A stretch of 64,000 nt of DNA, from the IMG/VR virus record IMGVR_UViG_3300031951_000003, positions 62,001 to 126,000 of that record; one strand, given 5' to 3'. Under the pieces are notes generated by a model, which did not search any database, was not told the origin of the DNA, and was given only the letters and a program-made list of their open reading frames with translations. Both the position numbers and the translations under genes were made by a program. This document shows, one piece after another, positions 58,149 through 63,843 of the stretch. Numbering within the stretch: position 1 is the stretch's first letter; each line of letters begins with the position of its first letter.

Positions 58149-58177
58149 AAAACCCCCGCCATTGATAACGAGGGTTA
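58147..58177. terminator. Possible terminator between the convergent kinase and hsp20 genes
   Basis: AAAAACCCCCG...CGAGGGTTAT imperfect hairpin with a T-tract on the minus strand. Confidence 0.5.
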
Positions 58178-58197: not shown

Positions 58198-58596
58198 CTA
58201 TAGAATACTAATTCTTTTCTTTTCTTGTTTTATATAATTGGGAACAAAAACTGTTAACATGCCGTCTTCAATTGTTGCTTCGATTGATGAAGGATTGTAA
58301 CCTTCACCAATTTTAAATTCCTTAGAAATTTTCTTGGTTTTTTCTTCACCATTCAGTTTATAGTTTCTCATTCCGTCAATATGTAAAACACCATCTTCCA
58401 TTTCTACTTTCAAATTTGTTTTGTTGAATCCTGGTGCTTCGAAAAAAAGATAAGCACCGTCTTTGGTGTGGTTTATTTCATAATTTTCTTCAGAATTATT
58501 TTTTAACACTGAGGTGGTGAAATTGTAATTTCCCCTTTTGTTGTTAAAGAATGAATCCATAAGGTCTTCAAAATTTGAGAAATTTGAGTAATACAT
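58198..58596 (-). CDS. Small heat shock protein Hsp20 (likely start MYYSN at 58596)
   Basis: FEAPGFNKTNLKVEMEDGVLHIDG and ATIEDGMLTVFVP alpha-crystallin motifs. Confidence 0.9.
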   Translation of the reverse strand: MYYSNFSNFEDLMDSFFNNKRGNYNFTTSVLKNNSEENYEINHTKDGAYLFFEAPGFNKTNLKVEMEDGVLHIDGMRNYKLNGEEKTKKISKEFKIGEGYNPSSIEATIEDGMLTVFVPNYIKQEKKRISIL

Positions 58597-58669
58597 AATT
58601 TTTAATTTTTGTTTTATAAATTTATTATTTATTTTTGAGTAGTCAACTTTGATACCAAACCACCACAAA

Positions 58670-58743
58670 TGACAATTTGTAAGTGGAATTATAGATAATA
58701 TGACAAAGTGTCAATAAAAAAAATAAATCCTGTCAATTTGTCA
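58670..58743. promoter_or_regulatory. Array of three TGACA-N3-TGTCA near-palindromes between the divergent hsp20 and clpC genes
   Basis: TGACAattTGTAA (58670), TGACAaagTGTCA (58701, perfect) and TGTCAattTGTCA (58731). Confidence 0.65.
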
Positions 58744-58794
58744 AAACATTTGTTTGTGTCTCAAATTTGATGTTAATTTGTAAAAATATCTACT

Positions 58795-60810
58795 ATGAAT
58801 GATTTAATGGATGACGACGAAAAAATGATGAGCAAGAAACAAAAACAATCATCAGACAGTCCAACCCCTGTGTTGGATAATTTTAGTCGAGACTTAAATA
58901 AGCTCGCAGAACAAGGTAAGTTGGACCCAGTTATAGGTCGCGACAGAGAAATCTTGAGAATTGCACAAATTCTTTCAAGAAGAAAAAAGAACAATCCAAT
59001 TATTATCGGAGAACCAGGTTGTGGTAAAACCGCAATTGTTGAGGGACTGGCAATGAAAATTGTAAGTGGTGATTGTCCCCGTAACTTAGTTGACAAACGT
59101 ATCGTAAACTTAGACCTTACCTCTGTTGTCGCAGGAACAAAATATCGCGGCCAATTTGAGGAAAGAATGAAAGTTATCATCGAAGAACTACAATCCAATC
59201 CGAACGTTGTTGTATTCATTGATGAAGTACACACATTGGTTGGTTCTGGTAACTCGGCGGGGTCTATGGATGGTTCCAATATTTTCAAACCCGCTCTTTC
59301 ACGCGGTGAGATTCAAATTATCGGTGCTACAACCCTCGATGAATTCCGAAAGAATATAGAAAAAGACGGGGCACTAGAGCGTAGATTCCAAAAAGTTGTT
59401 GTTGACCCATCAACAGTTGTTGAAACAATCCAAATTCTCAAAAACATCCGTGAGAAATATGAAAGTTATCACAAGGTTTCATATTCGGATGAGGTCATCG
59501 AATCATGTGTTAAACTTGCAGACCGATACATCACCGACCGTGAATTCCCTGATAAAGCATTCGACATCTTGGATGAAGTAGGTGCAAGAATGCAGACAGA
59601 ACTCAAGGTCCCTGAATCAATCGAAGAATTGAAAAAGAAGGCGGCTGAAATACGTCAGTTAAAAGTTGATGTAGTAAAAAAACAGAACTACGAACAAGCG
59701 GCACAGTTACGCGATAAGGAAAAGAAATTGTTGGACAAATTGGATACTGAGAAGAAGAAATTCGAAGAAGAAATGATTAACAACAAACAACAAATTTCCG
59801 TTGAGGATGTGTATGATGTGGTTTCTTCTATGACCAAAATCCCTGTGAATAAAATGAGTGTTGATGACACTAAAGCTCTTGTCAATTTGGATAAGGAATT
59901 AATAGGTAAAGTCATTGGACAAGACGATGCTGTTAGGAAAATTGCTAAGGCAATCAAAAGAAACAGACTTGGTATCAAAGACCCAAATCGTCCCATCGGT
60001 TCATTTGTTTTCTTGGGTTCGACAGGTGTGGGTAAAACTCACTTAGCTAAACAATTGGCAAAAGAAATGTTTGGAAGTGAAGACTCCCTAATCAGAGTTG
60101 ATATGAGTGAATATCAAGAAAAACATACCGTATCTAAATTAGTAGGTGCTCCTCCAGGTTACGTAGGTTACGAAGAAGGTGGACAGTTGACTGAAAAGGT
60201 AAAAAATAAACCATACTCAGTTATTCTTTTCGACGAAGTTGAAAAGGCGCACAAAGATGTGTTCACAATTCTTCTTCAAATTTTAGATGATGGACATGTA
60301 ACTGACAGCTTAGGTCGTAAAATCAATTTCAAAAATACCTTGATTATTTTGACATCAAACCTCGGTGTAAAGAAATTACAAGATTTTGGAACAGGTATTG
60401 GGTTTGGTTCTAGCACTTATAGTAATGAAGAGGCCAAGAAACAAGTATTGATGAAGGAAATGAAAAATTTCTTCTCTCCTGAGTTTTTGAATCGTATTGA
60501 CGATACAATTGTATTCAACTCTCTTAGTCAAGATGATATTAAAAAAATCACTAAGATTGAACTTGATAAGTTAATCTCACGTCTCAACGAAATGAATTAT
60601 AAAATCACATACGATGAGACCTTGACTGAACATCTCGCAAAAGTTGGATTCGATGAACTATATGGTGCAAGACCTCTCAAACGAGCAATCCAAGATAAAG
60701 TCGAGGATTTGATTTCAGAAGAAGTTTTGACCGACAAATTAGTAGAAGGAAAAAACTATATTGTCAAAGTAGAAGAAGATACTGTTAAGGTTGTTAAGAA
60801 AGGAAGATAA
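58795..60810 (+). CDS. clpC: ClpC-type AAA+ chaperone/protease subunit lacking the N-terminal Clp-repeat domain
   Basis: Two AAA+ modules (GEPGCGKT, GSTGVGKT), UVR-like KKQNYEQAAQLRDKE middle domain, GIGFG ClpP-docking loop; starts directly at TPVLDNFSRDL. Confidence 0.88.
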   Translation: MNDLMDDDEKMMSKKQKQSSDSPTPVLDNFSRDLNKLAEQGKLDPVIGRDREILRIAQILSRRKKNNPIIIGEPGCGKTAIVEGLAMKIVSGDCPRNLVDKRIVNLDLTSVVAGTKYRGQFEERMKVIIEELQSNPNVVVFIDEVHTLVGSGNSAGSMDGSNIFKPALSRGEIQIIGATTLDEFRKNIEKDGALERRFQKVVVDPSTVVETIQILKNIREKYESYHKVSYSDEVIESCVKLADRYITDREFPDKAFDILDEVGARMQTELKVPESIEELKKKAAEIRQLKVDVVKKQNYEQAAQLRDKEKKLLDKLDTEKKKFEEEMINNKQQISVEDVYDVVSSMTKIPVNKMSVDDTKALVNLDKELIGKVIGQDDAVRKIAKAIKRNRLGIKDPNRPIGSFVFLGSTGVGKTHLAKQLAKEMFGSEDSLIRVDMSEYQEKHTVSKLVGAPPGYVGYEEGGQLTEKVKNKPYSVILFDEVEKAHKDVFTILLQILDDGHVTDSLGRKINFKNTLIILTSNLGVKKLQDFGTGIGFGSSTYSNEEAKKQVLMKEMKNFFSPEFLNRIDDTIVFNSLSQDDIKKITKIELDKLISRLNEMNYKITYDETLTEHLAKVGFDELYGARPLKRAIQDKVEDLISEEVLTDKLVEGKNYIVKVEEDTVKVVKKGR

Positions 60811-63441: not shown

Positions 63442-63834
63442 GGGGAAGTCATGGCAATTGATTGGCGTGTGTAGTTATAGGTGGCACGTAGGAGCTGAGT
63501 TAACTCCTTTATCAACTGATTTGAAAAAACAAATGGCAATACTTTTGCTAAGATGGCTGCTATCGGTTTAATCGCTGAAGAAGCTACTGTTGTTGCTTAA
63601 TTTAAGTCACGACACTCGGGTCGGTTAGGACATTAACCTAGGAACAGAAGTCCAATATACGGGTCACAGGTCAGAGCTCGTTTAAAATAATTCTGAGACC
63701 AAGTTGTTTGTAGGTGGGTTTCTCACATATATCAAACCTAATATTTCGGAACATTGAGAAACAATGTTGTAATAAACGTGTAGTCACTTATAGTTGTCGC
63801 GAACAAGACACGGGTTCGACTCCCGTCTTCTCCA
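63442..63834 (+). ncRNA. ssrA: tmRNA (phage-encoded)
   Basis: 5' GGGGAAG pairs with 3' CTTCTCC-A including the G3:U alanine identity pair; T-arm ACGGG-TTCGACT-CCCGT; internal tag ORF 63535-63600. CCA is not encoded (ends CCACAG). Confidence 0.92.
63535..63600 (+). other. Predicted tmRNA tag reading frame (A)GNTFAKMAAIGLIAEEATVVA*
   Basis: Resume codon GGC after AAAT, by analogy to Gly-starting Bacteroidota tags; Ala-rich frame ending in TAA. Confidence 0.7.
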
Positions 63835-63843
63835 CAGCAGATT

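What the first reader, a model, noticed from the sequence alone, without database searches (positions are those of the whole stretch)
58670..58743. Phased triple palindromic operator between divergent hsp20 and clpC
Seen: TGACA-N3-TGTCA-type 13-mers at 58670, 58701 and 58731, spaced 31 and 30 bp apart (about three helical turns each), in the intergenic region of two chaperone genes. It does not match the CIRCE, HAIR or CtsR boxes as I recall them. Inference: a binding array for an unidentified heat-shock or phage regulator that places the phage chaperones under stress control.
Basis: partly seen in the sequence, partly recalled or inferred. Interest (0 to 1): 0.6.

Follow-up and report, generated by a model that had tools for sequence, protein, structure and literature searches.

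The report
Phage hsp20 wired to host heat-shock enhancer
The three 13-mers are real and conserved: together with a sigma-54-type promoter they form the control module that Bacteroidota place before their own hsp20, dnaK and htpG genes, and a 321-kb jumbo phage carries a copy before its own small heat-shock gene, so that this gene probably answers the host's protein-stress signal.

Summary
Three TGWCA-N3-TGWCA-type 13-mers lie at 58670, 58701 and 58731, spaced 31 and 30 bp, between divergent hsp20 and a Clp/Hsp100 ATPase gene. Only the middle one is a perfect palindrome.

The window lies in a 321-kb jumbo phage. Three results change the reading.

- In 70 related phage loci the sites appear only when a stress gene (hsp20, a two-UVR-motif protein or dnaK) lies divergent to clp: 49/56 against 0/14. 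They belong to that gene, not to clp.
- On the hsp20 strand, 13 nt after the nearest site, lies a conserved GG-N8-TTG element (TGGTAT-N5-TTGAC). It has the spacing of a sigma-54 -24/-12 promoter.
- The same composite (palindrome, 13 nt, TGGYAY-N5-TTG) sits before host hsp20, dnaK, htpG and clpB in Bacteroidota: 51 hits against 2 control hits in 301 genomes. In Flavobacterium psychrophilum these genes have mapped sigma-54 promoters.

The sites are phased by whole helical turns with each other and with the promoter. I conclude the array is most likely an enhancer (upstream activating sites) for a host sigma-54 activator, not a repressor operator. The likely binder, inferred only, is a sensor-less AAA+/HTH_8 enhancer-binding protein. 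The phage encodes neither sigma-54 nor such an activator.

No paper found names this site. No expression data were obtained.

The parts
58670..58682 (.). Site 1, promoter-proximal 13-mer (TGACAATTTGTAA; one mismatch to TGACA-N3-TGTCA). It ends 13 nt upstream of the GG of the hsp20 promoter. Its centre is about -46 from the predicted hsp20 start.
   Evidence: The same 12-14 nt gap is seen in 26 phage relatives and 40 of 41 host promoters.
58701..58713 (.). Site 2, a perfect palindrome TGACAAAGTGTCA. Its centre is about -77 from the predicted hsp20 start.
   Evidence: It is the only perfect TGACA-N3-TGTCA in the 321-kb genome.
58731..58743 (.). Site 3, TGTCAATTTGTCA (a direct repeat of TGTCA; the perfect palindrome TGACAATTTGTCA in most relatives). 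Its centre is about -107 from the predicted hsp20 start. It also lies 5 nt upstream of the -33 TTTG of clp.
58652..58657 (-). TGGTAT, the -24-type element of the predicted sigma-54 promoter of hsp20 (GG at 58656/58655).
   Evidence: GG-N8-TTG is conserved in relatives (T 44/46, T 35/46, G 39/46 at the -12 positions, anchored on GG). The same element is found in host chaperone promoters and in TSS-mapped F. psychrophilum promoters.
58642..58646 (-). TTGAC, the -12-type element. The spacing from GG is exactly that of TGGCAC-N5-TTGC. The base after TTG is A, not the canonical C.
   Evidence: TTGA also stands at -12 in the mapped clpB, lon and skp promoters of F. psychrophilum.
58630..58630 (-). 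Predicted hsp20 transcription start (plus or minus 2 nt), giving a leader of about 34 nt. This is inferred, not observed.
   Evidence: GG lies at -26/-25 from mapped starts in the F. psychrophilum promoter table. No reads could be laid here.
58198..58596 (-). hsp20 (132 aa, alpha-crystallin family), the gene driven by the module.
58151..58176 (-). Terminator-like hairpin with a T-run just after the hsp20 stop codon. It makes hsp20 a one-gene unit.
58749..58780 (+). clp's own Bacteroidota-type promoter: -33 TTTG (58749-58752), a 20-nt spacer, and -7 box TTAATTTG (58773-58780). The predicted start is near 58783.
   Evidence: Sequence. The TTTG(G)-N19/20-nnnnTTTG-TAAAA arrangement is conserved in relatives. 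The box-to-start geometry comes from the sigma-A rows.
58795..60810 (+). Clp/Hsp100-type double-AAA+ ATPase without an N-domain (671 aa), divergent neighbour of hsp20.

Best explanation
The three 13-mers, together with a -24/-12 element 13 nt downstream of site 1 on the minus strand, form one control module for the phage hsp20 gene. The module copies the one that Bacteroidota use for their own heat-shock genes.

Proposed mechanism:
- Host RNA polymerase with sigma-54 binds TGGTAT-N5-TTGAC (58657-58642, minus strand) as a closed complex.
- Dimers of a host enhancer-binding AAA+ activator bind the TGWCA-N3-TGWCA sites, centred near -46, -77 and -107. All three lie on one face of the helix.
- The activator assembles there and uses ATP to open the promoter when the host senses protein damage.
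- Phage hsp20 is therefore switched on by the host's own proteotoxic-stress signal, which infection with a jumbo phage is likely to raise.

The likeliest binder is the sensor-less bEBP found in the host genomes examined: the Sigma54_activat domain starts at residue 13, followed by an acidic linker and a C-terminal HTH_8 domain, an architecture like PspF.

Shown: the sites, their conservation, their linkage to the stress gene, their phasing, and the shared module in host chaperone genes.
Inferred: sigma-54 dependence in the phage, activation rather than repression, the identity of the binder, and induction during infection.
For: (1) Among 70 non-redundant related phage intergenic regions, 49/56 with a divergent hsp20, UVR-motif or dnaK gene carry at least one exact TGWCA-N3-TGWCA. 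None of the 14 with another neighbour does (Fisher p = 6e-10). Those 14 loci have no composite anywhere.
(2) GG-N8-TTG is conserved 50-61 nt before the stress-gene ATG.
(3) Phasing: site-to-site spacings cluster at 20-23, 29-32 (35 of 56 pairs) and 41-43 bp. Gaps from site to GG cluster at 12-14, 34-36, 44-45 and 55 nt.
(4) Hosts: 5 of 7 Bacteroidota hits of a double-palindrome scan lie before hsp20, with the same palindrome, 13 nt, TGGYAY-N5-TTG layout. All 12 composite hits in five genomes are before hsp20, dnaK or htpG, against 0 control hits. In 301 sampled Bacteroidota genomes there are 51 hits against 2 control hits; of 29 loci read, 25 have htpG, dnaK or clpB downstream by their N-terminal sequence. 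The gap is 13 nt in 26/41 although 8-20 (five-genome scan) or 10-15 (301-genome scan) was allowed.
(5) In F. psychrophilum, groESL, dnaK, grpE-dnaJ, htpG, clpB and lon start from TSS-mapped sigma-54-type promoters (PMC9723704). Its groS and clpB promoters show the TGTCA/TGTCC half-site 13 nt before GG. Sigma-54 promoters of other clusters (remF, skp) do not.
(6) Sigma-54 promoters are enriched before GroEL/ES, IbpA, GrpE and DnaJ/K in Bacteroidota (PMC12316311).
(7) The phage has no sigma-54, no bEBP and no TetR. The composite occurs once in its 321 kb.
(8) A bEBP with HTH_8 and no sensor domain is present in 4 of 5 host genomes and is the only bEBP found in one of them. The other conserved bEBP has no DNA-binding domain.
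(9) A 5-N3-5 palindrome is a known bEBP site geometry: LuxO binds TTGCA-W3-TGCAA.
Against: - No expression or binding data.
- The phage promoter matches the enterobacterial consensus TGGCAC-N5-TTGCW at only 7 of 11 specified positions. The -12 'GC' is 'GA', although mapped Flavobacterium promoters share this.
- A site centred at -46 is much closer to the promoter than classical enhancers, which lie at -80 to -150 (from memory).
- Half-site centres 8 bp apart are tight for an HTH dimer.
- The host of this phage is unknown. Bacteroidota is inferred from promoter style, from 3% Shine-Dalgarno use and from the shared module.
- The closest relative, L003, has only degenerate sites (GACA-N3/4-GTC).
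- Nothing ties the HTH_8 bEBP to the motif except elimination. One of the five host assemblies shows no copy, though it is a 1.4-Mb MAG.
Confidence: 0.7

Rival explanations
1. The 13-mers are operators of a host heat-shock repressor, in the manner of HrcA/CIRCE, HspR/HAIR or CtsR. The repressor would keep the promoter shut until stress releases it.
For: The sites are palindromic and come in phased arrays, as cooperative repressors use. The nearest site lies right next to the promoter, at about -46, closer than classical enhancers. Chaperone-titrated repressors are the usual logic outside the Proteobacteria (established knowledge).
Against: The sites never overlap the -24/-12 core; they keep a fixed 13-nt gap upstream of it. 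Sigma-54 promoters are silent without an activator and need an upstream activator site. In the single-site dnaK and htpG promoters the palindrome is the only conserved upstream element. Non-heat-shock sigma-54 promoters lack it, as expected for a regulon-specific activator site. There is no match to CIRCE, HAIR or CtsR.
Confidence: 0.15
2. The array is bifunctional. Besides driving hsp20, the protein bound at site 3 also modulates the divergent clp promoter, so that both chaperone genes are co-regulated.
For: Site 3 ends 5 nt upstream of clp's -33 TTTG, a juxtaposition kept in many relatives. Its centre is about -46 from the predicted clp start, mirroring site 1 at hsp20.
Against: Host hsp20 genes have the same two-site array with no divergent gene. 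Relatives with another gene upstream of clp lack the sites altogether, and close relatives that have lost the exact palindromes keep the clp promoter. The conserved 5-nt gap may only reflect shared descent within one clade.
Confidence: 0.2
3. The sites bind a phage-encoded regulator, for example a TetR- or Xre-like repressor that times the expression of the chaperone genes during infection.
For: In Bacillota the same paired 13-mers flank the promoters of TetR-family (TetR_N + TetR_C_19) genes, apparently as autoregulatory operators. So TGACA-N3-TGTCA can be a repressor site.
Against: The motif stands before host chaperone genes in many Bacteroidota that carry no such phage. The phage has no TetR_N and no bEBP. 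The composite occurs once in the phage genome, whereas a phage timing regulator would be expected at several promoters.
Confidence: 0.05
4. The sites are chance or compositional: AT-rich intergenic DNA rich in TTTG promoter pieces happens to give three look-alike 13-mers.
For: Only one of the three sites is a perfect palindrome. Sites 1 and 3 contain TTTG, the Bacteroidota -33/-7 core. The pattern was defined after seeing the sequence.
Against: The sites are conserved across phages whose Clp protein is only 69-91% identical, and they track the stress gene. They are phased. In hosts they are about 25-fold enriched over the reversed control and lie almost only before chaperone genes.
Confidence: 0.02

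Closest known systems
Sigma-54 (SM4) promoters of the protein-quality-control genes of Flavobacterium psychrophilum (Guerin et al. 2021, PMC9723704)
   Same: A -24/-12 element of the TGGYAY-N5-TTGA type before groES, dnaK, htpG, clpB and lon, with mapped starts. The groS and clpB promoters show the TGTCA/TGTCC half-site 13 nt before GG, the same layout as the phage hsp20.
   Different: That work named neither the upstream palindrome nor the activator. Here the module sits in a phage genome before a phage gene, and carries three sites instead of one or two.
PspF and the pspA promoter of E. coli (phage-shock response)
   Same: A sigma-54 promoter for a stress gene, driven by a bEBP that has no N-terminal sensor domain. 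The NCBIfam PspF model aligns from its position 1 to residue 13 of the host bEBP. Control in trans by a partner protein is the expected logic.
   Different: The host protein reaches no PspF equivalog cut-off. PspF sites lie further upstream and have another sequence (from memory). The regulon here is made of cytoplasmic chaperones.
LuxO sites before the qrr genes of Vibrio (TTGCA-W3-TGCAA)
   Same: A 13-bp 5-N3-5 palindrome bound by an HTH_8 bEBP upstream of sigma-54 promoters (PMC11443567).
   Different: The half-site sequence differs: 3 mismatches at best in the phage region. The regulon is quorum sensing, and the sites lie further from the promoter (from memory).
NorR at norV and NtrC at glnAp2: multi-site enhancers (from memory)
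   Same: Two or three sites on one face of the helix nucleate the active AAA+ oligomer.
   Different: The sequences and distances differ. No homology is claimed and none was tested here.
HrcA/CIRCE, HspR/HAIR and CtsR heat-shock operators
   Same: Inverted or direct repeats before hsp20, clp, dnaK and groE genes that couple them to stress.
   Different: Those are repressor sites on sigma-70-type promoters. No sequence match is found here.
TetR_C_19-family autoregulators of Bacilli and Clostridia
   Same: The identical paired TGACA-N3-TGTCA 13-mers, 16-19 nt apart.
   Different: There the sites flank a TTGACA-type promoter of the regulator's own gene. No sigma-54 element or chaperone gene is involved. 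This looks like convergence on a simple palindrome.

Membership tests
Sigma-54 (-24/-12) promoter | GG and a TTG(C) element with GG-N8-TTG spacing (TGGCAC-N5-TTGC) | tested here: met
   The phage has TGGTAT-N5-TTGAC at 58657-58642 (-). The spacing is exact in relatives and hosts.
Sigma-54 (-24/-12) promoter | The canonical GC dinucleotide at -12 | tested here: not met
   The phage has GA, and so do 29/46 relatives and 25/41 host promoters. TSS-mapped sigma-54 promoters of F. psychrophilum (clpB, lon, skp) also read TTGA, so this looks like a lineage variant. It still lowers certainty.
Sigma-54 (-24/-12) promoter | The transcript starts about 12 nt after the -12 element and needs rpoN | not testable with these tools
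The start near 58630 is extrapolated.
Sigma-54 (-24/-12) promoter | Sigma-54 is available in the cell | tested here: inconclusive
   The phage lacks PF04552. The control genome Bacteroides thetaiotaomicron has it. The phage's actual host is unknown.
bEBP enhancer (upstream activating sequence) | Repeats upstream of a -24/-12 promoter, specific to one regulon | tested here: met
   The sites are found before hsp20, dnaK, htpG, clpB and groS, but not before remF or skp.
bEBP enhancer (upstream activating sequence) | Face-of-helix relation to the promoter and between sites | tested here: met
   Spacings and gaps fall in steps of about 10.5 bp.
bEBP enhancer (upstream activating sequence) | Usual position of 80-150 bp upstream | tested here: not met
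   The nearest site is centred at about -46, and single-site host promoters have only that one. Sites 2 and 3, at -77 and -107, are in or near the usual range.
bEBP enhancer (upstream activating sequence) | Bound by a bEBP through its HTH domain | not testable with these tools
   A candidate was identified by domain content only.
CIRCE / HAIR / CtsR operators | Match to the consensus repeat | tested here: not met
   The best matches are 9/18, 7/14 and 6/15 mismatches.
TetR-family operator (as in Bacillota) | A cognate TetR gene next to the sites or in the genome | tested here: not met
   There is no TetR_N in the phage. The Bacteroidota sites adjoin chaperone genes, not TetR genes.

The most novel reading that the evidence does not exclude
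TGWCA-N3-TGWCA, placed 13 nt upstream of TGGYAY-N5-TTG, is the so far unnamed enhancer of the Bacteroidota heat-shock regulon. It is read by a sensor-less, PspF-like HTH_8 bEBP from an unusually close position (-46). Jumbo phages have captured this whole module, swapping hsp20, a UVR-motif protein or dnaK behind it, to make their own chaperone genes obey the host's stress sensor. That would be an enhancer-dependent sigma-54 promoter working inside a phage genome without any phage-encoded activator.
Probability: 0.5. Interest if true: 0.7.

Novelty: new variant of a known kind. Interest (0 to 1): 0.62.

Why it matters
It is known that Bacteroidota, which lack RpoH, run chaperone genes from sigma-54 promoters. 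In the literature I could search, the activator and its DNA site are not named.

This phage locus, read together with its relatives and with host genomes, yields three things:
- a precise, testable site (TGWCA-N3-TGWCA, fixed 13 nt before the -24 GG);
- a short list of one candidate activator;
- a core regulon of hsp20, dnaK, htpG and clpB.

It also shows a phage borrowing a complete host stress-response switch rather than only a chaperone gene. That predicts the phage sHSP is made on demand, when infection overloads protein folding. The swap of cargo genes behind a conserved switch is a clean example of modular promoter capture.

For annotation, the composite is a simple marker of heat-shock genes in Bacteroidota and their phages.

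Tried and rejected
- Sigma-70 reading: TTGACA-like hexamers inside the sites, with a TATAAT 15 nt away on the minus strand, were considered. I rejected this because of the spacing, because the generic scan found no more promoter-like sites than in shuffles, and because the genome shows Bacteroidota-style signals.
- A first HMM for Hsp20 was too narrow and gave a false 'no association'. Pfam then showed that most unrecognised neighbours are two-UVR-motif proteins, and the table was redone.
It therefore gives no enrichment figure. Enrichment comes, which have their built-in reversed control.
- A half-site-only pattern was too noisy (23 hits against 7 control hits).
- No palindrome lies before the candidate bEBP gene itself, so there is no sign of autoregulation.
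- Literature searches for the motif strings and for a Bacteroidota heat-shock bEBP found nothing relevant. This covers only the held library.

Full report
**Where the window lies.** It is bases 62001-126000 of a 321,139-bp virus record with direct terminal repeats and 35% G+C, a jumbo phage. Only 9 of 299 crude gene calls have a Shine-Dalgarno-like sequence. The promoters look like the Bacteroidota -33 TTTG / -7 TAnnTTTG type. The host is not known; Bacteroidota is inferred.

**The observation.** Only the middle one is a perfect palindrome. The first has one mismatch and the third is a direct repeat of TGTCA. All matches to the loose pattern in the 64-kb window fall here, against 1.15 expected. 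The perfect palindrome is unique in the 321-kb genome.

The neighbours are an Hsp20-family gene (58198-58596, minus strand, 132 aa) and a 671-aa double-AAA+ Clp/Hsp100 ATPase without an N-domain (58795-60810, plus strand). The ATPase reaches no ClpB, ClpA or ClpK equivalog cut-off. There is no CIRCE, HAIR or CtsR box.

**To which gene the sites belong.** A scan of viral contigs with the Clp protein gave 80 loci at 69-100% identity. In most of them, TGACA-N3-TGTCA sites stand upstream of clp, usually two sites 30-31 bp apart.

The gene divergent to clp varies:
- an Hsp20 in 20 loci;
- a 120-157-aa protein with two UVR motifs in 42 loci;
- DnaK in one locus (L073);
- an unrelated gene elsewhere (a KTSC-domain protein or others).

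Among 70 non-redundant intergenic regions, 49 of 56 with a stress-type neighbour carry at least one exact TGWCA-N3-TGWCA. None of the 14 with another neighbour does (Fisher p = 6e-10). Those 14 loci contain no such element anywhere in about 8 kb. Most of the 7 exceptions have sites with one or two mismatches. The sites therefore go with the stress gene, not with clp.

clp keeps its own TTTG-N19/20-nnnnTTTG promoter in the close relatives, including those where the exact palindromes have decayed. The loci whose clp has another neighbour are more distant, and their promoters were not analysed.

**The promoter next to the sites.** Read on the hsp20 strand, every such region has a conserved GG(C/T)A(C/T)-N5-TTG 50-61 nt before the ATG. 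In the window this is TGGTAT (58657-58652), caaag, TTGAC (58646-58642). The spacing is exactly that of the sigma-54 consensus TGGCAC-N5-TTGC. The base after TTG is mostly A instead of C.

The gap from the end of the nearest site to GG is 12-14 nt in 26 regions, and otherwise 34-36, 44-45 or 55 nt. Site-to-site spacings cluster at 20-23, 29-32 (35 of 56 pairs) and 41-43 bp. Everything is thus offset by whole helical turns, on one face of the DNA.

In the whole phage genome this composite occurs once, here. A related complete phage has it once, at the same locus. Another complete relative, with no stress gene next to clp, has none. A terminator-like hairpin follows hsp20, so the unit is a single gene.

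**The same module in hosts.** There the sites flank the promoters of TetR_N + TetR_C_19 regulator genes. That is a different system using the same simple palindrome.

Of the 7 Bacteroidota hits, 5 lie directly before a host hsp20. Their layout is palindrome, 18-19 nt, palindrome, 13 nt, TGGYAY-N5-TTG.

In those five genomes the composite pattern gave 12 hits against 0 for the reversed control. All 12 lie before hsp20 (5), dnaK (4) or htpG (3).

In 301 Bacteroidota genomes drawn evenly, 41 genomes gave 51 hits against 2 control hits. Of 29 loci read, by N-terminal sequence 19 have htpG downstream, 5 dnaK and 1 clpB (25 in all). One short mis-called frame may be a twentieth htpG, and the other three are different or unclear.

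The gap was 13 nt in 26 of 41 although 8-20 (five-genome scan) or 10-15 (301-genome scan) was allowed. A T precedes GG in 39 of 41. The base after TTG is A in 25 of 41, as in the phage.

**What is known.** In Flavobacterium psychrophilum, 5'-end mapping placed a sigma-54-type motif (SM4) before groESL, lon, dnaK, grpE-dnaJ, htpG and clpB. Three proteins there have a sigma-54 interaction domain, and no activator or upstream site was assigned (PMC9723704).

Its promoter table shows GG at -26/-25 from the mapped start. The groS and clpB promoters carry TGTCA or TGTCC ending 13 nt before GG. The sigma-54 promoters of remF, skp and another gene, which belong to other co-expression clusters, have no such half-site. 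TTGA at -12 is common.

A survey of sigma-54 regulons also finds chaperone genes, IbpA-type sHSPs included, enriched in Bacteroidota and Planctomycetota (PMC12316311). Searches for the motif strings, or for a named Bacteroidota heat-shock activator, found nothing in the held library.

**Who binds.** The phage encodes no sigma-54, no bEBP (only the Clp D2 module gives a weak hit) and no TetR.

The five host genomes share two bEBP types:
- a 387-aa receiver + AAA+ protein without any DNA-binding domain;
- a 402-425-aa protein whose Sigma54_activat domain starts at residue 13, followed by an acidic linker and a C-terminal HTH_8.

The second type has no sensor domain, as in PspF. It is the only bEBP found in one of the genomes, and it lies in a conserved miaB-bEBP-lipoprotein neighbourhood. 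By elimination it is the candidate binder.

A 13-bp 5-N3-5 palindrome is a known site geometry for an HTH_8 bEBP: LuxO binds TTGCA-W3-TGCAA. The link between protein and site is inference.

**Model.** Taking GG at -26/-25, the hsp20 start is predicted near 58630 (minus strand). The site centres then fall near -46, -77 and -107. Host sigma-54 polymerase would sit on the -24/-12 element. Dimers of the host activator on the phased sites would assemble and open the promoter when the host signals protein damage.

The close -46 position, the GA at -12 and the lack of any expression data are the weak points. A repressor reading cannot be excluded, and I give it about 0.15.

Site 3 also ends 5 nt before clp's -33 TTTG, about -46 from the predicted clp start. 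Some cross-talk to clp therefore remains possible.

**Limits.** Earlier searches had included them.

Noticed in passing
window 63442-63835 (+): ARAGORN calls a tmRNA gene with tag peptide AEEATVVA in the phage genome.
   Followed up: no
L004:2460-2828 (-), and 41 other related loci: In most relatives the gene behind the heat-shock module is not hsp20. It is a 120-157-aa protein with two UVR motifs and a weak likeness to the C-terminal part of McsA. It may be an adaptor for the neighbouring Clp ATPase.
   Followed up: partly
L073:940-2799 (-): One relative has a phage-encoded DnaK divergent to clp, behind the same palindrome + TGGCAT-N5-TGG element.
   Followed up: partly
L085-L157, many Bacillota loci (e.g. 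L121:206-247): Paired TGACA-N3-TGTCA sites flank a TTGACA-type promoter of genes for 200-220-aa TetR_N + TetR_C_19 regulators in Bacilli and Clostridia. This looks like an autoregulatory operator pair that happens to share the 13-mer.
   Followed up: partly
L148:2969-3060: A Muribaculaceae contig carries a tight cluster of at least five overlapping TGACATGATGTCA-type repeats with no chaperone gene recognised beside it.
   Followed up: no
window 58731-58752: Site 3 ends 5 nt before the -33 TTTG of clp, a gap kept in many relatives. Its centre is about -46 from the predicted clp start, mirroring site 1 at hsp20. Whether this matters for clp is unexplained.
   Followed up: partly
window 58795-60810 (+): The Clp ATPase lacks the N-domain. 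In the phage collection its best matches are uncultured phages of 635-642 kb (LR745206, LR756502; 59% identity) and human-faecal phage contigs.
   Followed up: no
L250:1465-2724, L251, L254, L248: The sensor-less HTH_8 bEBP of Bacteroidota sits in a conserved miaB-bEBP-small lipoprotein neighbourhood and has no palindrome before its own gene.
   Followed up: partly
L003:2832-3000: The closest relative (Clp 91% identical) has only degenerate sites (GACA-N3/4-GTC cores) although it keeps GGCAC-N5-TTGAC. The array is therefore decaying or drifting in some lineages.
   Followed up: no
L052, L060, L068-L070, L078-L080 (clp upstream): In the more distant clade the clp promoter looks like TTGAAA-N17-TATAAT rather than the Bacteroidota -33/-7 type, while the stress-gene side keeps the palindrome + TGGYAT element. 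The host range of that clade is unclear.
   Followed up: no
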